Shown: positions 489 through 56,345 of the stretch, one piece after another
Layout of the letters: every line of letters begins with the position of its first letter
Position numbering within the stretch: position 1 is the stretch's first letter
IMG/VR virus record: IMGVR_UViG_3300042923_000474
Coordinates: 1 to 64,000 of that record
Length of the DNA: 64,000 bases
Direction: 5' to 3' (one strand)
The notes under the pieces: model-generated
The model's database searches: none
Seen by the model: the letters and a program-made list of their open reading frames with translations, nothing else
Told to the model about the DNA's origin: nothing
Translations under genes and position numbers: made by a program

Positions 489-650
489 CGTAGGAGTCCT
501 TATAAAGGGTGTGGGAAAGGTCAAAAGATAGACCAGTGTATTATTTCCGCAAGGGTGTTCCTATGGTATAGCTCACAAGCGATTGGCGCCGGACAGGTGC
601 ATTAACCCTTTGCCGCCGGTTTCTGAAATGGCTGGAAATAAGCTGATCTC

Positions 651-672
651 AGACCTAGACTATCAAGGTGAA
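651..672 (+). promoter_or_regulatory. Putative early (virion RNAP) promoter motif, copy 1, upstream of chmA
   Basis: AGACCTAGACTATCAAGGTGAA; one of five intergenic copies of ARACCTARAYTATYAANKTGAR. Confidence 0.65.
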
Positions 673-726
673 TGGTTCTGGAATTAGCTATTCATAGGCC
701 GAAATAATTCCATCAAGGAGACGGCA

Positions 727-2763
727 ATGCCCGTTGAAAAACGAGGCGACGCATCTTCTGGGAACATCATGGCAGAGGCTTTTAAGAAAGCCAATGTCGC
801 GACCCCGGAACCGTCGCCAAAACAACCCGAGACATCCGCAGCGTCTTCCGCTTCGAGTGCCCAGGTTGAAACTTCTGCGGTCGAAAGACCACAGCCTGCA
901 ATACGACAACGGCAAGCCCAGCAACGCGAAGCAGTTGTCGAACAATCCTCTCACGTGAAAAAGGACAGCATCAACATGTCTCAAACTGACTTCTCCCAAG
1001 GCCGCCGCGACCAGGGCAAAGACGCCAAGAACTTCAACACCCTGAACGACATGGGTGCGAAGCGTCTGCGTCCGCTCAGTCGTTCGGCTGGCTCCGTGCG
1101 CGCCAAAGAACTGGCAACTGCGATCGAGAAAGAGCTGAATGCTGGCCTGAACAAGGACGGCGTATCCAGCTGGGCTGTACAGATCCTGGACGCCGGTCAA
1201 CTGAACCTGCCAACCAGCTCGGTCGTGCTGCTGCAAACGGTCACCGCTGAAAGCATCGACCACATCACCATGTACTCGTTCATGATCGACGGCGCAGACA
1301 TTCGTCTGACTCCACGCGTGGACAAAGTCGATGGCCGTCCGTACGAAACCCCAGTGGTGATCGGCGACATCTACAACAGCCAGGACTACATCACTCGCGC
1401 CGAAGAGCTGATCAAGCAAGCCCGTCCAACCCGCCAGATCAACCTGATCGACGCCGGTGCGACCGTGTTCCCTGCTTCGTTCAACATCGAGCAACATGGC
1501 GTGTGGGACCTGCTGTACAAGGCCACTCTGGCCCTGTTCAACACCATGAACAACCAGGTTGATCTGGGCGAAGAGCCTGCGTACACCCTGGCCGGTCGCA
1601 ATGCCGGTAACGAGCAACTGGTTGGTCGCCTGAACTTCTCCGGCGAGAAGTACATCGACGAAGTCGGTCACCCACAACGTCACGATGTCGTGATCGAAAT
1701 GGACTCCGTGCGTCATCAGCAAGGTCGCGACTTCTCCGGCAACTCCAGCAACGTGACCAAGGTCGCGGGCTACATGGAACCGGTTTACGCTCAGCCTGAT
1801 CCGCAGAACCCAGCGAACAACCAGCCGTTCCTGAACCAGTTCGTTATCACCCAGCTGGCCACCGGTTACGACGCGATCGAAACCGAAATGACCATCCTGG
1901 CTCTGGTTACCTCGACCATGGTTCAAGTACGCAACGGCTGGGCTGACGCCTACCTGCCGCGCTACGCCAACCAGGGCAAAGAGCTGAACTACCGCGACGT
2001 CGGCGCGCTGGGCTTCTGCATGGGCGATGCCAAGCGTATCGACACCAAGGCTGCCAGCTTCAAGGACAACTTCGGCCAGTTCATGCGCGATTACTTCCGC
2101 CTGAACCAAGGCGTGATCTTCTCCATGGACATCCCTGAAGTCGGCCCTGATGCGTTCATCACTGACATCTTCCGCGCTGCGGCTGGTGGCAACCCGAACG
2201 CTGTAGCGGCAATCACCCAGGCGTGCGACAACCTGACCGGCGGTGTTTACAGCCAGAAGGTTGCTCAGTACGGCGGCAACTTCCCGATGTTCATCGACAC
2301 CGGCAACCGTATCCACAACGGTTACTACGTCAACGAAGCGGGCGAGCTGCGTGACATCCGTGACATCGACATGCTGGCAGTGGCCAACGTGCTCGGCAAA
2401 ACCAACCCGCAAGCGCTGGTTGACTACGCTGACTCGTACGTCGCATCCACCGGCCAAGCGGCCGTTCGCATGTCCAAGCGTCTGGCGATCATCGACGACG
2501 TGCTGCAAGGTCGTCAGGTCATCACTGGCTTCTCCGGTCGTTACATCATCGGCCCGAAATGGCTGCAGGTGATCTCCGAAGCTTGCCAAGCGTGCAACCT
2601 GGTTGTTAACCCAGCCAACATGGTTCACGGCCTGGGCTCGGGCGCTGTCCTCGGCGGTTACGACTACGCAGCATTCGCTGCCGGTGGTGCTGGCGGTGGC
2701 GTGTTCAACGGTGGCGGCAACAGCAACCCACAATCGGCTTACGCCGGTCGCGGTCGCTGGTAA
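727..2763 (+). CDS. chmA: Chimallin, phage nuclear shell protein
   Basis: Segment RDVGALGFCMGDAKRIDTKAASF closely resembles the ChmA motif (KDIGALGW...RIDTKAANF). Disordered N-terminus and G-rich C-terminal tail; lies directly upstream of nvRNAP beta'; AAGGAG SD. Second in-frame start with its own SD at 976. Confidence 0.9.
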   Translation: MPVEKRGDASSGNIMAEAFKKANVATPEPSPKQPETSAASSASSAQVETSAVERPQPAIRQRQAQQREAVVEQSSHVKKDSINMSQTDFSQGRRDQGKDAKNFNTLNDMGAKRLRPLSRSAGSVRAKELATAIEKELNAGLNKDGVSSWAVQILDAGQLNLPTSSVVLLQTVTAESIDHITMYSFMIDGADIRLTPRVDKVDGRPYETPVVIGDIYNSQDYITRAEELIKQARPTRQINLIDAGATVFPASFNIEQHGVWDLLYKATLALFNTMNNQVDLGEEPAYTLAGRNAGNEQLVGRLNFSGEKYIDEVGHPQRHDVVIEMDSVRHQQGRDFSGNSSNVTKVAGYMEPVYAQPDPQNPANNQPFLNQFVITQLATGYDAIETEMTILALVTSTMVQVRNGWADAYLPRYANQGKELNYRDVGALGFCMGDAKRIDTKAASFKDNFGQFMRDYFRLNQGVIFSMDIPEVGPDAFITDIFRAAAGGNPNAVAAITQACDNLTGGVYSQKVAQYGGNFPMFIDTGNRIHNGYYVNEAGELRDIRDIDMLAVANVLGKTNPQALVDYADSYVASTGQAAVRMSKRLAIIDDVLQGRQVITGFSGRYIIGPKWLQVISEACQACNLVVNPANMVHGLGSGAVLGGYDYAAFAAGGAGGGVFNGGGNSNPQSAYAGRGRW

Positions 2764-2770
2764 GAAGTTC

Positions 2771-2907
2771 GGCCGGGCGCGTAGTTCCCCTTCGCGCCTG
2801 ACTGTGCTACCGCTGAGTAATCAGCGGACGATAGGACGACTCGAAAGCCACTTGGTCGAAGACCAGGTCAACATAAAGGGTAGGCTGCCCTGTGATCGTC
2901 CGGGTAC
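2771..2907 (+). ncRNA. Candidate structured RNA element in the chmA 3' UTR
   Basis: Five manually identified helices, including CCGCTGA-GTAA-TCAGCGG and the long-range ACGAT/ATCGT pair; followed by a terminator. Confidence 0.5.
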
Positions 2908-2908
2908 T

Positions 2909-2935
2909 AGCCGCCCTCCAGGGGCGGCTTTACTT
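2909..2935 (+). terminator. Intrinsic terminator after chmA
   Basis: AGCCGCCC-TCCA-GGGGCGGCT hairpin followed by TTACTTATGC. Confidence 0.75.
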
Positions 2936-2969
2936 ATGCCCTCAATTCTTTTTTATGGGAGATTTGGCT

Positions 2970-4475
2970 GTGGGGTTAATTGCCTACATCGTTGACCATA
3001 AGCAACTCCTCAATGAACTTGAAGAGCCACCGCTTGTTGTCAATGACCTGAATCTTGACTTCGGGACAAAAGAAGGTAAAGATCAGCTGGCCATGTATCT
3101 GTCGTTTCAATTCGACGGCGACATCATCCCAGCGGTACCAACCTGTCTCGGCGGTCACATCGGCGGGGAAGATAAACTCGGCGATAAGTGTGAGATCTGT
3201 GATACTCGGGTAACCAGTCTCGTAGACCGCGCTGTGGATCAGAGTGTTTGGATTCGCCCACCGGAAGGTGTCAACGGATTTATTCACCCTGAAGTCTGGA
3301 ACGTGCTGTCCCCCAGGCTGACTCCGCTCAAATCGTTCTCGATGCTGAGCTGGGTGTGTGACCCGAACTACGGCGAGACGTTACCGGCATTCGCTGCGGT
3401 GCTCGACGAGTACAAGAAGTTACACAAGCGTAGCCTCAACTACGTGTTGGAAAACTTCGATGACGTGATTCACTTCATCATTACATCGAAGCTGTGCAAC
3501 AAACTGTCGCTACAGGACAAGACCGACATTCAGTTGTTCTTGCTGCAAAACCGTGACAAGGTAATCCAGAAGTATCTGCCGTTACCTAGCTCCATCTTCG
3601 TGGTGTCCGAAAAGACAGCGATGGGTACCTACGCTGACGAGAAGACACCTGCCCTGTTGGATGCGATCTACATGATCACCTCCACCTACGGATCGGCCAT
3701 TGCGCTGAACCAACGGCAACGCGAATCGCACGCTGCTCGTTTCATGGCGGCTATCGGTCCGTGTTATCAGGCAATCTGTACCAAGTTCATCGGCAGTAAG
3801 TATGGTCTGGTTCGTCGTCAATTGATCGGCAGCCGTCTGCACTTTACTGGCCGGGCGGTTATCACTTCCATCAGTGATTCCCACCATTATGAAGAGCTGC
3901 ATGTACCTTGGGCTTTCGCTGTACAAATCCTGGAACCACATCTGCAGAACAAACTGATGCGCCGAGGCTTCTCAGCCAACGATGCACTGGAGTTCCTGGA
4001 AGATCACACGCTGCAATGGCATCCACTGTTGCGTGAACTGTTTGACGAACTGATTGCCGAAGCTCCGCCAATCGATGACTTCCCACCTGGGGTCTTCGAG
4101 GACATCGACAATGATCCATCGCTACTGCGTGGCATTCCGTGCCTGCTGCAGCGTAACCCATCGCTGACCCGCTTGTCGGCTCAGTGCCTGCGTATCACCC
4201 GAATCAAAGACGATGTCGAGGATTACACCATCTCGCTGTCGAACATGATTCTGGTCAGTTACAACGCCGACTATGACGGTGACGAACTGAACCTGTTGCT
4301 GTGCCTGGACAGGAAGATGCTGCAGTGGTTCGAGCGTTTCCGTCCACACCTGGGCATGCGTTCGCTGCGTGAGCCGCGTTCTTTGTCCGACAACCAGAAG
4401 ATCCACGCACCGGTCGCCGCTACATGGGCGCACTACGTGCACCATTCTGAACGTAAATCACCTACTGTTCATTAG
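2970..4475 (+). CDS. rpoC: Non-virion RNA polymerase beta' N-terminal subunit with catalytic Asp motif (phiKZ gp55-like)
   Basis: Contains a Zn-binding CLGGH...CEIC segment, KYGLVRRQLIGSRLHFTGRAVI, LQRNPSL and NADYDGD. Start reassigned to GTG 2970 (GGGAG SD at 2957-2961); the ORF-track start lies inside the RNA element. Confidence 0.93.
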   Translation: MGLIAYIVDHKQLLNELEEPPLVVNDLNLDFGTKEGKDQLAMYLSFQFDGDIIPAVPTCLGGHIGGEDKLGDKCEICDTRVTSLVDRAVDQSVWIRPPEGVNGFIHPEVWNVLSPRLTPLKSFSMLSWVCDPNYGETLPAFAAVLDEYKKLHKRSLNYVLENFDDVIHFIITSKLCNKLSLQDKTDIQLFLLQNRDKVIQKYLPLPSSIFVVSEKTAMGTYADEKTPALLDAIYMITSTYGSAIALNQRQRESHAARFMAAIGPCYQAICTKFIGSKYGLVRRQLIGSRLHFTGRAVITSISDSHHYEELHVPWAFAVQILEPHLQNKLMRRGFSANDALEFLEDHTLQWHPLLRELFDELIAEAPPIDDFPPGVFEDIDNDPSLLRGIPCLLQRNPSLTRLSAQCLRITRIKDDVEDYTISLSNMILVSYNADYDGDELNLLLCLDRKMLQWFERFRPHLGMRSLREPRSLSDNQKIHAPVAATWAHYVHHSERKSPTVH

Positions 4476-4483
4476 GAGCAAGC

Positions 4484-4867
4484 ATGAATCAATTGGGCCC
4501 CAACCTAACCAAGATTCTGCAAGAGCAACAAGCAGATATCGATCCGCTGCTCAAGGGCATGATCGATGATCAGGGAGCCACCAATGCGGTGGTCGATGGC
4601 GTTGCTCAAGTCATCCTGGAAAAGATTGCCATGGCACAAGTCGTGGCAGTTACCAGCGCCGCCACACAGAACAAACCTGTGGACGTGAGTAAGATCCAAC
4701 AGGGGCGGGTTAAGCTTGTAGAGGGTCTGCTGATGATGTTGGAAGGTCAAGATGCTTTGATCGACTTCATCGGCGAAGACGAGATCCTGGGCGATGTCGA
4801 CTTACTGGAAGTTCTCCGTGAGTTCATCGCCTACAACCAGCCCCCAAGCGAGGAATCCGCACAATGA
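4484..4867 (+). CDS. Hypothetical protein
   Basis: AGGAG SD; operon spacing; ATGA overlap with the next gene. Confidence 0.8.
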   Translation: MNQLGPNLTKILQEQQADIDPLLKGMIDDQGATNAVVDGVAQVILEKIAMAQVVAVTSAATQNKPVDVSKIQQGRVKLVEGLLMMLEGQDALIDFIGEDEILGDVDLLEVLREFIAYNQPPSEESAQ

Positions 4868-5286
4868 GCCGTCTGCAAAAGTACGCTGAACTGCACCGCT
4901 ACGCTACCCGTCTGGCCGAAGACGATCTGACTGAAGATCAGGACGAAGCCGCGACCGTGGCCTACTCCGTGGGTCAAATCGCTCAGGCTGTGGGTACCAC
5001 CATCCAGGGCGTGGCGCTGCGCATCCACAAGACTGACGACCAAGCGGCCAAGGACATGTTCTACTCTGGTCTCTCGGAAGTTACCGAGCAGCTCAACGCC
5101 ATGTGTGAAAACGTCGGCGTCATGGCTGCACCGTTCTCCGGGCTGCGTGAAGAAGCTGATAGCGAGCTGTCGCCTCAGCTGCGTGACTCGGTGGCGATGT
5201 TCTCCGACGATGCTCACAGCAAAGTCCTGTTCCAGGCTCAGGAGTTCATCGCTGAGCATTTGAAAGAGGGCCGCGTCAGTGAGTAA
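4864..5286 (+). CDS. Hypothetical acidic helical protein (paralog of 5279-5689)
   Basis: Coupled start and biased codons; N-terminus MSRLQKYAELHR. Confidence 0.8.
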   Translation: MSRLQKYAELHRYATRLAEDDLTEDQDEAATVAYSVGQIAQAVGTTIQGVALRIHKTDDQAAKDMFYSGLSEVTEQLNAMCENVGVMAAPFSGLREEADSELSPQLRDSVAMFSDDAHSKVLFQAQEFIAEHLKEGRVSE

Positions 5287-9861: not shown

Positions 9862-10590
9862 ATGTCCGGCGGTAACGCAGCCCGTACCAACCTCCCCACC
9901 GCGCTGATTGAATTCCGTCTGCGTTTGACTGCTGACAAATTGCCAGAAGGTCGTAAAAACCCGAACCTGGAAGTGAGCGTCAACAAGAAGAACGAAGTCC
10001 AGATCGGTTGCAACACCGGCATCTTCGGTGCCGACAATGCCATGGTTCGTATCCAGGGTACCATGGGCGCATTGGAGTTCAGCCTCCTGCACATGTACGC
10101 TGAAGACATCCACGCCAAAGAACCCGGCTTCAAGTTCCCGCTGCTCCGCCTGTATGGCCCACGCAAGAAGCGCACTCCGCAAGACGCCGGCAAAGGTCTC
10201 GATGCCGTGGTTCTGGTCGGCAAAGACGCGAATGGCGCTTGTTTCATCTCGGTCATGCGCAAAGATGCTCCGCAGGTCAAGTTCATCTTCCAACCTGGCC
10301 GCTGGACTGAAATGGTTGATGCAACCACCCAGCAACCACTGTCGCAAGCTGAGCTGTCCAACTGGTACTCCCAGGCCTGGGCCCGCACCTTTGCACCGCT
10401 GGTTTCCTACGCCCTGAACGTCAAGGTGTACGACTTCCGCGAAGACAACGACCAGAACGGCGGTGGCCAGAACAACAACGGTCAGCAGAACAATTACCAA
10501 CAGCGCAACAACCAGCAGCAGGCGCCGGCTCAAGCAGCTGCTCCAGCTGGCGGCGACTTCGGCGGCTTCGACGACGACATCCCGCTGTAA
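9862..10590 (+). CDS. chmC: Probable ChmC, nucleus-associated nucleic-acid-binding protein
   Basis: Immediately upstream of the sigma-like nvRNAP subunit; N/Q/G-rich disordered tail ending DDDIPL; AAGGAG SD; strong codon bias. Confidence 0.6.
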   Translation: MSGGNAARTNLPTALIEFRLRLTADKLPEGRKNPNLEVSVNKKNEVQIGCNTGIFGADNAMVRIQGTMGALEFSLLHMYAEDIHAKEPGFKFPLLRLYGPRKKRTPQDAGKGLDAVVLVGKDANGACFISVMRKDAPQVKFIFQPGRWTEMVDATTQQPLSQAELSNWYSQAWARTFAPLVSYALNVKVYDFREDNDQNGGGQNNNGQQNNYQQRNNQQQAPAQAAAPAGGDFGGFDDDIPL

Positions 10591-47501: not shown

Positions 47502-47540
47502 ATAAAAGCCGGGCCTTAGGGTCCGGCTTTTATGCTGTCG
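47502..47540 (+). terminator. Intrinsic terminator
   Basis: ATAAAAGCCGGGCC-TTAG-GGTCCGGCTTTTAT followed by GCTGTC. Confidence 0.85.
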
Positions 47541-47581
47541 TTTGAACATGCTATGAACGCTTCCCTCTAAGGACTACCAAC

Positions 47582-49162
47582 ATGCCCAACGGTAACTTTG
47601 CCATCGGGAACACCTACGAGACGACAACCCGCCCCGTGGCTTGGGCCGTGGCAAAAGATTGCCTTGCTCGTTTAGGGTTCGCCGAGGGTGCCTTCTTGAA
47701 CTTTGTCGGGCACTATGAAAAGACCCAGACAAAAGACACCGCCATTGACGACTATCAGAACAAGAACTGGTTCGGTACTAACACCGAAGCGATTCTGCAA
47801 GTCGAAGAAGATCCGATCATTGAAAGGATCTACGAGGCGTCCGTCATCCGACTGGATAACGTCCCTGTGTTCAAAGACGCAGAGACCCACACTTACATCC
47901 GCCCCATCTACCAACCCGTCAAGATGACCTTGCGCTTTCGCTTGCGTTGTAAAGATGAGGTGGAGGCTAACCGCTACCGCGACGACACATGGGCACGATC
48001 CCATCTGTTACGCCATGAGGGGCTGCATGAGCTTACTTACCACTGGCAACTGCCTAAGGTCTACCTTGTCATCTTGCAGGAGATCTGGAAGCTCCAGGAG
48101 GCTCACGACAAGACAGGGACTTCATTCGGTAAATACTTGCGTGATCGCTTCGATCCTCGCATTGACACCGTGACCAACTTGGCTGGTAAAGAGGCTACGT
48201 TGGTTGTACCGGAAGATCAAGTCCGTGCGTTGGGTTGGTTTGACTTTGCTGGGGTGATGGAAAAACCTACCTTCAACAAAGACAACGGTACGTGGGATCT
48301 GGAATGGTCGTACAGTCTGGTCTATGACAAACCTGTCGAAGCTGCCATGACTTATCCGCTGGTGGTTCGCCAGAAGATGATCGGGCCAGACTTCCGTCCA
48401 ACCAAGGGCATGTACAAACTCGACGACAAAGATCCAAGTCTGTCGAACGTGCAGCGCTCGCTGTTCAGCTTCTTCAACGTGTGGGTGCCGCCCAAGGGGA
48501 TTCTGGATCGTCGTTATCCAGACTTCGACACGTGGGAGCCAGAGGCGCCTACCTACGGCTGCATGGATCTGTGGATTGGCATGCTCGGGCTTAAGCTTGA
48601 GAACCGCCGTGATCTCGTGTCCGTTAACCGCCTAGGTGAGCATAAGCTCTCCGACGCTGCCCTCACCCTGTTGATGGATGAGCGTGAGTACGTCTGTAAC
48701 CCCCGTCAGAGCATTTTCGAGATTGGGGTGTACTCTGACAACGAAAGAGCCTTCCCTGATCAGGTGACGCTCGGTGAGGACGGCATTGTGCGGGCCAACT
48801 TTGACCTGTCAATGATTCCGATCTATCACGTCGTGGTTTCGTTCCGTACGGATCTGCGCACCCTCGACCCTGAGAACATCCCTCGCATTACCAAGAACGC
48901 CTGCAAGGTCTACGGCGTATTGGCAGAGATGTATCCTCGTGCTGTTGAGTTGGGCCTACTCCCATTACCCAGCAAGCGCTGTCAGTGGACATGGGATCAG
49001 TGGCAACAGATCGTTGAGGTCGTCAGCCCCCCACCACGTCGCCCTAATCCCAACCCTGGAGTGGGAGGCGGAACCTCTGTCTCAGCTAACCAACGTCGTC
49101 TAGCCATGCAGACGGTAGGCACATACACCATCATTACCCGGAGAGACAAAAATGTTGATTGA
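47582..49162 (+). CDS. Virion structural protein (possible neck/tail-terminator)
   Basis: AAGGA SD; position in the structural block. Function is inferred. Confidence 0.55.
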   Translation: MPNGNFAIGNTYETTTRPVAWAVAKDCLARLGFAEGAFLNFVGHYEKTQTKDTAIDDYQNKNWFGTNTEAILQVEEDPIIERIYEASVIRLDNVPVFKDAETHTYIRPIYQPVKMTLRFRLRCKDEVEANRYRDDTWARSHLLRHEGLHELTYHWQLPKVYLVILQEIWKLQEAHDKTGTSFGKYLRDRFDPRIDTVTNLAGKEATLVVPEDQVRALGWFDFAGVMEKPTFNKDNGTWDLEWSYSLVYDKPVEAAMTYPLVVRQKMIGPDFRPTKGMYKLDDKDPSLSNVQRSLFSFFNVWVPPKGILDRRYPDFDTWEPEAPTYGCMDLWIGMLGLKLENRRDLVSVNRLGEHKLSDAALTLLMDEREYVCNPRQSIFEIGVYSDNERAFPDQVTLGEDGIVRANFDLSMIPIYHVVVSFRTDLRTLDPENIPRITKNACKVYGVLAEMYPRAVELGLLPLPSKRCQWTWDQWQQIVEVVSPPPRRPNPNPGVGGGTSVSANQRRLAMQTVGTYTIITRRDKNVD

Positions 49163-55807: not shown

Positions 55808-55820
55808 GTACCGGTCCTAT

Positions 55821-56345
55821 ATGTTCGGAGGTCGAGACTACCAACCGGGGGCGATTAACCTTATCGCTGTACCTCGGTGGCTCGACTTGGCTTTTAAATC
55901 GAAGGGAGTGACGGTCGAGCAAGCCATCGGGCTCGATCCTCAACTGGGATTCACTGACTGTCGCAGTACGCAGTTCGTTGCGCCTATAGTGTCATCCCAA
56001 GAGGTTGACTTTCACAACACTGTCACGTGGGGATTGGCCGATTACCTATTCCCTGAGCCTAAGCAACGAGGCAACCGTGACGAACTATATGCGAAACTTG
56101 TGCGCGATTGGCACGGGGTTCCTCTTGTAAAAGGGCTGAAGGTTAACCTCCACCCTATTATCTTGGGGAGCAATCTCATTGGTCTGTACCACGTCGAGGA
56201 AGAACCCGGTGTGACCGATACAGATTTATATGGGCGTATTCTGCGATGCGCACATACCTTGGCTTATAGCAAAATCGGTGTCGGTGCTTTCGGCTGCGAC
56301 TTGATTAAGGATGTGTTGTACGAGATTTCGCTGGGTCAGCAATGA
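55821..56345 (+). CDS. Conserved hypothetical protein upstream of the MCP gene (phiKZ gp119 position)
   Basis: Open frame from ATG 55821; exact start is uncertain (no upstream SD). Confidence 0.65.
   Translation: MFGGRDYQPGAINLIAVPRWLDLAFKSKGVTVEQAIGLDPQLGFTDCRSTQFVAPIVSSQEVDFHNTVTWGLADYLFPEPKQRGNRDELYAKLVRDWHGVPLVKGLKVNLHPIILGSNLIGLYHVEEEPGVTDTDLYGRILRCAHTLAYSKIGVGAFGCDLIKDVLYEISLGQQ

What the first reader, a model, noticed from the sequence alone, without database searches (positions are those of the whole stretch)
2764..2935. Multi-stem structured RNA directly downstream of chmA
Seen: a long gap in an otherwise tightly packed genome that folds by hand into CGGGCGCG/CGCGCCTG (2774-2800), CCGCTGA-GTAA-TCAGCGG (2810-2827, GNRA loop) and a long-range ACGAT/ATCGT helix (2828-2832/2895-2899). 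That helix encloses CTTGGTC-GAA-GACCAGG (2851-2867) and CATA-AA-GGGTA-GGC-TGCCC-TGTG (2872-2894). A separate terminator follows. I could not match it to hammerhead, HDV-like, twister, pistol or common riboswitch cores. Inference: a novel ncRNA or 3'-UTR element on the shell-protein mRNA, possibly for stability, localisation, ChmC binding or export, or a processed sRNA.
Basis: partly seen in the sequence, partly recalled or inferred. Interest (0 to 1): 0.75.

Follow-up and report, generated by a model that had tools for sequence, protein, structure and literature searches.

The report
Structured RNA tail on shell-protein mRNA
The gap after the nuclear-shell (chimallin) gene of this uncultivated jumbo phage encodes a conserved, densely folded RNA of a family not yet described, most likely a 3' tail that keeps the shell-protein message (or a fragment cut from it) stable and recognisable.

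Summary
Window 2764-2935 folds far better than shuffles on the + strand (z -4.65) but not on the - strand. It is the most densely structured of 54 intergenic gaps of at least 120 nt in the 231.7-kb phage genome.

The flanking genes are chimallin (727-2763) and the non-virion RNA polymerase beta' subunit (GTG 2970). Fourteen of 16 relatives in this uncultivated clade carry a modular structured RNA at the same place.

The conserved core (2834-2901) is a three-way junction. It has invariant junction and loop bases and a probable pseudoknot (2847-2849 with 2883-2885). It abuts the clade's standard terminator hairpin (2909-2929).

Covariation is strong:
- 96% of cells pair, against 84% in shuffles and 36-47% in slid controls.
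- A near-identical phage (chmA 99.3% nt) differs by 17 bases here, 12 of them as six compensatory pairs.

There is no match in Rfam, ARAGORN or deposited phage DNA. The core is single copy per genome.

Function is untested. My best reading is a 3'-UTR domain acting as decay barrier and protein-recognition module. phiKZ and PhiPA3 hold an analogous hyper-conserved RNA region at this locus, which gave ChmC eCLIP peaks in PhiPA3.

The parts
727..2763 (+). chmA (chimallin, phage-nucleus shell protein) coding sequence, stop TAA 2761-2763
   Evidence: Pfam PF25677 at E 2e-43 and phrog_4795 'nuclear shell protein' at E 8e-73. Relatives are 55-100% identical.
2766..2808 (+). Module M1: long hairpin starting a few nt after the stop codon. 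Its inner stem is 2774-2781/2793-2800; an outer helix is formed by the conserved UUCGG and its partner.
   Evidence: MFE fold. Eight relatives keep a hairpin here with the invariant UUCGG 5' flank, and their inner stems differ in sequence while staying complementary. Three other relatives carry a different first hairpin with a conserved 14-nt loop.
2810..2827 (+). 7-bp hairpin with GUAA (GNRA) tetraloop. It occupies the place where most relatives carry a roughly 65-nt pseudoknot-type module ('motif Y').
   Evidence: The pair 2814/2823 changes U-A to C-G in the near-identical phage L010. Motif Y is absent from this genome.
2834..2901 (+). Conserved core ('motif X'), a three-way junction. Pa is 2834-2839 + 2841-2843 with 2893-2901. 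Junction a/b is 2844-2849. Pb is 2850-2868. Junction b/c is 2869-2876. Pc is 2877-2891. No base lies between Pc and Pa.
   Evidence: Covariance model R1 scores 117-133 bits in 11 distinct sequences. Six of 8 Pa pairs and 5-6 of 8 Pb pairs show changes on both sides. Pc is nearly invariant. The core is single copy per genome.
2847..2849 (+). 5' strand (GCC) of the probable pseudoknot; it pairs with the Pc loop GGC at 2883-2885
   Evidence: All 3 pairs form in 11 of 11 sequences. One relative (L021) has GUC with GAC, a compensatory change. Two relatives have G-U wobbles. This is thin support: a single double change.
2883..2885 (+). Pc loop GGC, the 3' strand of the probable pseudoknot
   Evidence: As for 2847-2849.
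2902..2941 (+). Terminator module: GC hairpin 2909-2929, flanked by GGGTA (2902-2906) and TGCCC (2937-2941), which can extend the stem. It belongs to a genome-wide hairpin + TTTATGCC signal.
   Evidence: Terminator scan. The stem covaries at 3 pairs. Eleven strong hairpin + TTTATGCC-type sites occur in this genome, most of them 30-60 nt after a gene end. The motif is also present in the two relatives that lack the structured element.
2949..2969 (+). T-run (2949-2954) and Shine-Dalgarno GGGAG (2957-2961) ahead of the next gene
   Evidence: Read. The spacing and the GGAG are conserved in relatives.
2970..4475 (+). Non-virion RNA polymerase beta'-like subunit (N-terminal part), start GTG 2970
   Evidence: phrog_2987 at E 5e-128 and Pfam PF00623. 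The chmA-then-polymerase order is kept in phiKZ, PhiPA3, FLC9, LucasX, Noxifer, Eowyn and others.

Best explanation
Shown: the DNA between the chimallin stop codon and the phage's standard terminator encodes a + strand RNA that is under selection to fold. In this phage the RNA has four parts. First comes a long hairpin, then a GNRA hairpin, then a conserved three-way junction probably locked by a 3-bp pseudoknot, and last the terminator hairpin.

Inferred: the RNA is transcribed as the 3' untranslated end of the chmA message, or of the chmA segment of an operon transcript. It works in cis as a compact 3' domain with two roles:
(a) It blocks 3'-to-5' decay, so that the shell-protein message, needed in great excess over the polymerase message that follows, outlives the rest of the transcript.
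(b) Its invariant junction and loop bases offer a specific surface for an RNA-binding protein. ChmC is the obvious candidate.

A stable 3' fragment would be a natural by-product.
For: Structure and strand:
- z -4.65 on + against -1.74 on -.
- Many G-U pairs would be A-C mismatches on the other strand.
- 96.3% of cells pair, against 84.3 +/- 1.1 in shuffles (0 of 500) and 36-47% when partners are slid. 16-17 pairs change on both sides.
- Against L010 (chmA 99.3% nt identical), 12 of 17 substitutions in the gap are six compensatory pairs.

Position:
- The RNA always lies between the chmA stop and the terminator, on the same strand, once per genome. It is present in 14 of 16 loci.
- No terminator-like site precedes it.
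- It is the densest structure among the genome's gaps.
- The chmA 5' leader also has a conserved covarying hairpin before the Shine-Dalgarno, as stabilised messages often have.

Specific recognition:
- Unpaired bases in both junctions and the Pc hairpin are invariant across chimallins only 55-89% identical.
- ChmC is encoded at 9862-10590.

Analogy:
- PhiPA3 shows high eCLIP coverage between chmA and gp54 (PMC11077065).
- The phiKZ gap is 394 nt, has no ORF above 31 aa and folds at z -3.47.
- That gap is 85% identical to PS119XW, while the flanking genes are 65-67% identical at DNA level and chimallin 48% at protein level.
- phiKZ chmA is described as part of an operon (PMC8244752).
Against: - There are no transcript data for this phage or its clade. 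Transcription through the element, 3' ends and half-lives are all inferred.
- A plain decay barrier needs no invariant loops, and the GC-rich terminator alone would serve. The stabiliser role may therefore be secondary to an unknown specific function.
- Two clade members (L026, L027) do without the element, so it is not essential to chimallin expression as such.
- ChmC showed no sequence motif preference in PhiPA3.
- The pseudoknot rests on one compensatory change.
- Homology with the phiKZ/PhiPA3 RNA is not demonstrable. The best R1 hits fall at the same place but score only 14 bits.
Confidence: 0.45

Rival explanations
1. The functional product is a free, trans-acting small RNA. It would be cut from the chmA 3' end, or made from its own promoter, would end at the terminator, and would act on host or phage targets or as part of a ribonucleoprotein.
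For: A structured domain plus terminator hairpin is the usual layout of 3'-UTR-derived sRNAs (established knowledge). The authors read the PhiPA3 eCLIP peaks at the analogous gap as small regulatory RNAs. The phiKZ-lineage gap is more conserved than its neighbouring genes.
Against: I found no promoter-like motif inside the gap. The single-stranded stretches are short, and the b/c junction differs between this window and its relatives, which is poor for a seed. The tail after the hairpin is U-poor, so it is not a classic Hfq-type end.
Confidence: 0.2
2. A read-through controller. The folded domain would sense a ligand or protein, or act on the phage polymerase, and set how often transcription passes the terminator into the polymerase gene. 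This would work like a riboswitch or a put-like antitermination RNA.
For: The element sits immediately 5' of a terminator that separates chmA from the nvRNAP gene, and no separate promoter is evident for that gene. In the window, L001 and L018 the Pc 3' strand can pair with the terminator 3' strand at about -20 kcal/mol, z about -4. The core is a junction-plus-pseudoknot fold, as many aptamers are.
Against: The alternative pairing is not conserved in the other seven sequences. The terminator is the ordinary genome-wide type. The upstream modules vary freely in number and kind. No riboswitch family matches.
Confidence: 0.12
3. Mainly a DNA-level or mobile feature. The gap would be a recombination or homing-endonuclease hot spot whose hairpins are passengers, or a cruciform or origin-like site.
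For: The gap is a local hot spot of change against L010: 15 of 75 substitutions fall in one 200-nt bin. Modules are gained and lost among relatives. Homing-endonuclease genes sit next to chmA or the polymerase gene in several relatives.
Against: G-U pairs and the strand asymmetry of folding point to RNA. The substitutions in the hot spot are compensatory, which means selection on pairing. The core is single copy with no repeats elsewhere.
Confidence: 0.05
4. A self-cleaving ribozyme or tRNA-like processing signal that defines the 3' end of the chmA message.
For: It is a compact junction with a pseudoknot and invariant bases. Pc stacks directly on Pa, as the T arm stacks on the acceptor stem in tRNA, and the junction-to-loop pairing recalls the tRNA elbow. 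This is my reading, and it is inference.
Against: No hit to the hammerhead, twister, twister-sister, pistol, hatchet or HDV models, or to any other Rfam family. ARAGORN finds no tRNA or tmRNA in 12 loci. There is no CCA-like end.
Confidence: 0.04

Closest known systems
Unannotated RNA between chmA (gp53) and gp54 of PhiPA3, and the homologous 394-nt gap after PHIKZ054 of phiKZ
   Same: It lies at the same locus, between chimallin and the nvRNAP beta' subunit, on the same strand. It is long, ORF-free and strongly folded, with z -3.1 to -3.5, and it ends in a hairpin terminator followed by a T-run. It is modular, since PhiPA3 carries an extra insert of about 125 nt. It is also more conserved than the flanking genes. 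In PhiPA3 the RNA is abundant in ChmC eCLIP.
   Different: No sequence or model-level homology can be shown. R1 gives only 14-bit hits, R2 gives none, and blastn finds nothing. Other chimalliviruses have only 84-104 nt here. The trait is therefore lineage-specific, or has arisen more than once.
3' and intercistronic mRNA stabilisers (REP hairpins after malE, the puf operon stem-loops, RNase III-processed hairpins of T7 messages, the B. thuringiensis cry 'positive retroregulator'); named from established knowledge
   Same: Stable stem-loops directly 3' of a highly expressed structural gene, ahead of less needed downstream genes. The expected effect is protection against 3' exonucleases and differential expression within one transcript.
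   Different: Those elements are simple hairpins with little sequence constraint. This one is a multi-module fold with a junction, a probable pseudoknot and invariant unpaired bases. Its effect on half-life is untested.
Modular 3' UTRs of flaviviruses (xrRNA and dumbbell elements); named from established knowledge
   Same: A viral 3' UTR built from pseudoknotted junction modules whose number and kind vary between related viruses, with stable 3' fragments as products.
   Different: xrRNAs stop a 5'-to-3' exonuclease (Xrn1) with a ring-like fold. No such fold or enzyme is shown here, and there is no sequence relation.
3'-UTR-derived bacterial sRNAs (for example CpxQ, SroC); named from established knowledge
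   Same: They share the terminator of the parent message and are released by processing.
   Different: They need a conserved single-stranded seed and usually an Hfq-type U tail. Neither is evident here.

Membership tests
Any Rfam 15 family (riboswitches, ribozymes, sRNAs, leaders) | Score at or near the family's gathering threshold with its covariance model | tested here: not met
   In window 2500-3200 the best E-values are 1.5 or worse and all hits fall far below gathering. In eight relatives' loci the only hit is RsmY at 23 bits against a gathering score of 57.
Self-cleaving ribozymes (hammerhead, twister, twister-sister, pistol, hatchet, HDV-like) | Conserved catalytic core recognised by the family model | tested here: not met
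   No hit at E up to 10 in the window or up to 1 in relatives.
Self-cleaving ribozymes (hammerhead, twister, twister-sister, pistol, hatchet, HDV-like) | Site-specific self-cleavage | not testable with these tools
   Needs a cleavage assay.
Transcription-terminating riboswitch | A conserved alternative pairing (antiterminator) between the aptamer and the terminator | tested here: not met
   A strong alternative duplex is seen in only 3 of 10 sequences (window, L001, L018). It is weak or absent in the others.
Transcription-terminating riboswitch | Ligand-dependent structural change | not testable with these tools
   Needs in-line probing or similar.
Intrinsic terminator (the 3'-most hairpin only) | GC-rich hairpin followed by a U-rich tail at the end of a gene, recurring at other gene ends | tested here: met
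   The hairpin at 2909-2929 has 9 bp, 7 of them GC. Eleven hairpin + TTTATGCC-type sites occur in the genome, mostly 30-60 nt after gene ends. The U tail is interrupted (TTTACTT) and a T6 run follows 20 nt later. Conserved terminator sequence motifs are reported for 201phi2-1 and phiKZ (PMC11512511).
tRNA-like element / tmRNA | Cloverleaf or tRNA-like domain detectable by ARAGORN | tested here: not met
   No genes in 12 loci, including the window's.
CsrB/RsmY-type protein sponge | Several GGA motifs exposed in hairpin loops | tested here: not met
   The element has only two GGA (2826-2828, 2834-2836) and both lie in stems. The hairpin loops read GUAA, GAA and GGC. The RsmY model scores 23 bits against a gathering score of 57.
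3' mRNA stabiliser (REP / puf-type) | Stable secondary structure immediately 3' of the protected cistron, on the transcript | tested here: met
   Position and fold are shown. Being on the transcript is inferred.
3' mRNA stabiliser (REP / puf-type) | Lengthens the half-life of the upstream message | not testable with these tools
   Needs a half-life measurement.
Same RNA family as the phiKZ/PhiPA3 chmA-downstream RNA | Detectable sequence or structure homology | tested here: inconclusive
   blastn finds no match. R2 gives no hit. The best R1 hits in both loci fall at the 3' end of the same gap but score only 14 bits, mostly from the terminator.

The most novel reading that the evidence does not exclude
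Nucleus-forming phages may carry, right after the shell gene, a dedicated folded RNA that is more than a stabiliser. It would be a ribonucleoprotein or tertiary-structured RNA, bound by ChmC or another nucleus protein, that directs export, placement or local translation of the shell message, or that acts in trans during nucleus formation. The clade studied here and the phiKZ/PhiPA3 lineage would then hold two versions of it, either diverged beyond recognition or independently acquired.
Probability: 0.2. Interest if true: 0.85.

Novelty: new variant of a known kind. Interest (0 to 1): 0.6.

Why it matters
How messages leave the early infection vesicle and the phage nucleus, and how chimallin is made so fast and in such excess, are open questions (PMC12908238). 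This work gives a concrete, covariation-backed RNA fold attached to the chimallin message, with defined helices and a pseudoknot that can be mutated and restored.

It also points to an equally unexplained, hyper-conserved RNA region at the same locus in the tractable model phages phiKZ and PhiPA3, where published eCLIP data already show signal. Both make the question testable with ordinary experiments.

If the element is only a decay barrier, it is still a new RNA family and a compact mRNA-stabilising part for use in Gram-negative hosts.

Tried and rejected
Searches that found nothing:
- Rfam on the window, eight relatives and four deposited phages. Only a weak RsmY hit appeared, and I rejected it on score and for lack of GGA loops.
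- blastn against 50,697 phage records.
- ARAGORN.

Searches that added little:
- A DNA pattern scan of IMG/VR for the core found only the four contigs already known.

Ideas tested and dropped:
- TTATGCC as a promoter for the polymerase gene. The motif follows strong hairpins at many gene ends, including sites between converging genes, so I treat it as part of the terminator signal. A promoter role is not excluded.
- GGTATAGC, shared between the chmA leader and the 3' element, as a promoter motif. It is not recurrent in the genome.
- A coding explanation. The alternative-frame ORF 2603-2995 is not kept in L002, where its counterpart ends 30 nt into the gap, and modules differ by indels.
- An antiterminator pairing, which is not conserved.
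- Extra copies of the core or of motif Y elsewhere in four genomes. None were found.

Technical points:
- The model-based alignment mis-registers the 3' strand of Pa in sequences with a one-base gap. I checked those by hand, and every one forms an 8-9-bp helix, so the 88.6% pairing counted for Pa is an underestimate.

Full report
What is there.

The window is the first 64 kb of a 231,724-bp IMG/VR phage record with direct terminal repeats. The ORF at 727-2763 is chimallin (Pfam PF25677 at 2e-43; phrog_4795 at 8e-73). The next gene is the N-terminal beta'-like subunit of the non-virion RNA polymerase (phrog_2987 at 5e-128). Its start is GTG 2970 behind GGGAG 2957-2961, as the relatives show. 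The non-coding gap is therefore 2764-2969.

The phage is far from anything deposited. The best chimallin matches in GenBank phages are 26-28% identical, and no phage record matches the DNA.

Check of the observation.

The + strand of 2764-2935 folds to -80.1 kcal/mol, z -4.65, with 0 of 200 dinucleotide shuffles as good. The - strand gives z -1.74. Among 54 gaps of at least 120 nt in the whole genome, this one has the highest folding-energy density (-0.43 kcal/mol/nt) and the second-lowest z. The median gap is 33.5 nt by crude ORF calling.

Two details need correcting.
Relatives show that the conserved, covarying helix uses the second copy: 2834-2839 with 2896-2901, continued by 2841-2843 with 2893-2895.

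Relatives.

Chimallin searches gave 13 protein clusters, 55-100% identical. I fetched 16 loci: the window and 15 relatives, which form 14 distinct versions of the gap.

Fourteen of the 16 loci have a 190-380-nt gap between chmA and the polymerase gene. The other two, the most distant chimallins at 55-56% identity, have about 75 nt. That is only a terminator hairpin plus the same downstream motif.

The long gaps are modular.
- A first hairpin comes right after the stop codon. There are three types; the window's type has an invariant UUCGG flank.
- Inserts follow, and these are optional.
- In most loci a module of about 65 nt comes next. I call it motif Y: a closing stem, an A-rich strand and a hairpin with a CUGGCU-type loop.
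- Last comes a core that abuts the terminator.

The window and its near-twin L010 have a simple GNRA hairpin where the others have motif Y. Two relatives (L020, L025) have motif Y in place of the usual core.

The core.

In 11 distinct sequences the core is a three-way junction.
- Pa has about 9 bp.
- A 6-7-nt junction ends in GCC.
- Pb has 8 bp with a GAA or GUA loop.
- A junction of about 9 nt is A-rich.
- Pc is a nearly invariant 13-nt hairpin.
- No base separates Pc from Pa.

A covariance model scores 117-133 bits on all 11 sequences. It finds exactly one copy per genome, always after chmA, in the window's genome and three relatives' records.

On the model alignment 96.3% of cells form standard pairs. 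Column shuffles give 84.3 +/- 1.1 (0 of 500 reach the observed value), and slid partners give 36-47%. Between 16 and 17 of 39 pairs show changes on both sides. Pa is under-counted there, because a one-base gap mis-registers its 3' strand. Read by hand, every sequence forms an 8-9-bp Pa with at least eight different stem sequences.

The GCC of the first junction can pair with the GGC of the Pc loop in all 11 sequences. One relative has GUC with GAC, and two have G-U wobbles. I call this a probable pseudoknot, but it rests on one double change. That change also argues against the alternative partner for the Pc loop, the invariant AGCC at the terminator base, which does not change in that relative.

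Frequent G-U pairs fix the functional strand as +.

A natural experiment.

L010 comes from another metagenome and is 99.3% identical in chmA. It has the same 191-nt gap with no indel but 17 substitutions. Twelve of them are six fully compensatory pairs, one in the GNRA hairpin and five in Pb. One more substitution turns an A-U pair into G-U. Fourteen of the 17 lie in a 26-nt patch (2850-2875). The gap is a local hot spot: 15 of 75 differences over 5.2 kb fall in one 200-nt bin. Whether the patch arose by recombination or by stepwise change, pairing has been preserved.

The terminator.

The hairpin at 2909-2929 belongs to a genome-wide signal. Eleven strong GC hairpins are followed at once by TTTATGCC or a close variant, and most lie 30-60 nt after a gene end. 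Several have an upstream complement (GCATA-type) that lengthens the stem. This explains the invariant GGGTA before the hairpin and TGCCC after it here. The same signal lies between converging genes in a relative. Conserved terminator sequence motifs are known in 201phi2-1 and phiKZ (PMC11512511).

What it is not.
- It matches no Rfam family, and in particular no ribozyme or riboswitch.
- It is not a tRNA or tmRNA.
- It is not a Csr/Rsm sponge: the RsmY hit scores 23 bits against a gathering score of 57, and no hairpin loop carries GGA.
- It is not coding.
- It is not repeated elsewhere.
- An antiterminator pairing between Pc and the terminator is strong in three sequences but is not conserved.

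Context from model phages.

The chmA-then-polymerase gene order is general among nucleus-forming phages. The gap is 84-104 nt in Noxifer, Eowyn, pEa_SNUABM_37 and Xoo-sp14, and 164-250 nt in FLC9 and LucasX. In those two the terminator comes soon after the stop codon. The gap is 394 nt in phiKZ and 515 nt in PhiPA3.

The phiKZ gap has no ORF above 31 aa and folds at z -3.47. It is 85% identical to that of PS119XW, which belongs to another genus. Between the same two phages the chimallin proteins are 48% identical and the polymerase gene 67% at DNA level.

[quoted passage not shown] No paper I found describes the RNA itself.

The window encodes a ChmC homologue at 9862-10590, supported by synteny with PhiPA3 gp61, a full-length alignment at 23% identity and the same low-complexity tail. 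I cannot show homology between the two RNAs.

How it most likely works.

Shown: a selected + strand RNA fold at the 3' end of chmA.

Inferred: it is transcribed with chmA, since nothing terminator-like precedes it and phiKZ chmA is reported as part of an operon. It then forms the 3' domain of the message. The chmA leader also carries a conserved, covarying hairpin before the Shine-Dalgarno, which fits a message built to last.

I think the most likely role is a 3' decay barrier that lets the shell message outlive the downstream polymerase message, combined with a specific protein-recognition surface. The invariant loops and junctions are more than a barrier would need. My confidence in this mechanism is about 0.45. 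My confidence that the element is a real, selected RNA structure is about 0.9.

The rivals are a released trans-acting sRNA (0.2), control of read-through into the polymerase gene (0.12), a DNA-level or mobile feature (0.05), and a ribozyme or tRNA-like processing signal (0.04).

Novelty and score.

This is a new RNA family. Its general kind is known: structured 3' or intercistronic elements of highly expressed genes. Its architecture is unusual, being modular, junction-based and probably pseudoknotted, and its location is telling. I score interest at 0.6. The structure is solid and the link to the phage nucleus is suggestive, but the function is open and the clade is uncultivated.

Noticed in passing
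L028:4001-4394 (phiKZ 47529-47922); L045:2591-2981 (PS119XW); L039:2923-3437 (PhiPA3): The gap after chimallin in the phiKZ lineage is ORF-free and strongly folded. It is 85% identical between genera whose chimallins are 48% identical, so it is more conserved than the flanking genes. No Rfam match. It looks like an undescribed functional RNA in model phages.
   Followed up: partly
window 560-726: The region upstream of chmA is conserved at nucleotide level across the clade. It includes a covarying hairpin (about 662-706) just before the Shine-Dalgarno AAGGAG. The 3' end of ORF 72-605 overlaps this conserved block, so that ORF's end may be mis-called.
   Followed up: partly
window 58847, 54199(-); genome 104634(-), 115115(-), 146216, 166981, 178824(-), 192875, 219893, 221798: A recurrent punctuation signal: a GC hairpin, often with a TTCG loop, followed at once by TTTATGCC. 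Three sites share a longer tail ending in a T-run. Several have an upstream GCATA-type complement.
   Followed up: partly
window 9862-10590 (+): A ChmC homologue: synteny with PhiPA3 gp61 after an SbcD-like gene, 23% identity over the full length, and a Gly/Asn/Gln-rich tail ending in an acidic motif.
   Followed up: partly
L018:4261-6004, L025:2420-4177, L017:4410-5976; L030:5831-6203: In three relatives the polymerase beta' ORF is about 60 aa shorter and is followed by an HNH endonuclease gene. In LucasX a group I intron (RF00028, 54.7 bits) follows the same gene. This suggests intron or homing-endonuclease insertions in this polymerase gene.
   Followed up: no
L003:2308-2928, L018:1312-1932, L023:66-686: A GIY-YIG homing-endonuclease gene lies directly upstream of chmA in some relatives but not in the window.
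   Followed up: no
window 5001-5200: A second substitution hot spot against the near-identical phage L010: 22 differences in 200 nt, inside ORF 4864-5286, which has no known family.
   Followed up: no
window 2826-2840: A local duplication (GGACGAT then GGACGAC) gives the 3' strand of Pa two possible partners in this phage and in L010 only. The first copy overlaps the base of the GNRA hairpin, so two exclusive folds are possible here.
   Followed up: partly
genome 64328-64455, 89338-89482, 15687-15815, 55808-56225: Other intergenic gaps with strongly negative folding z-scores (-3.4 to -6.2). Some lie between converging genes and are probably two-way terminators. The 418-nt gap at 55808-56225 was not examined.
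   Followed up: no
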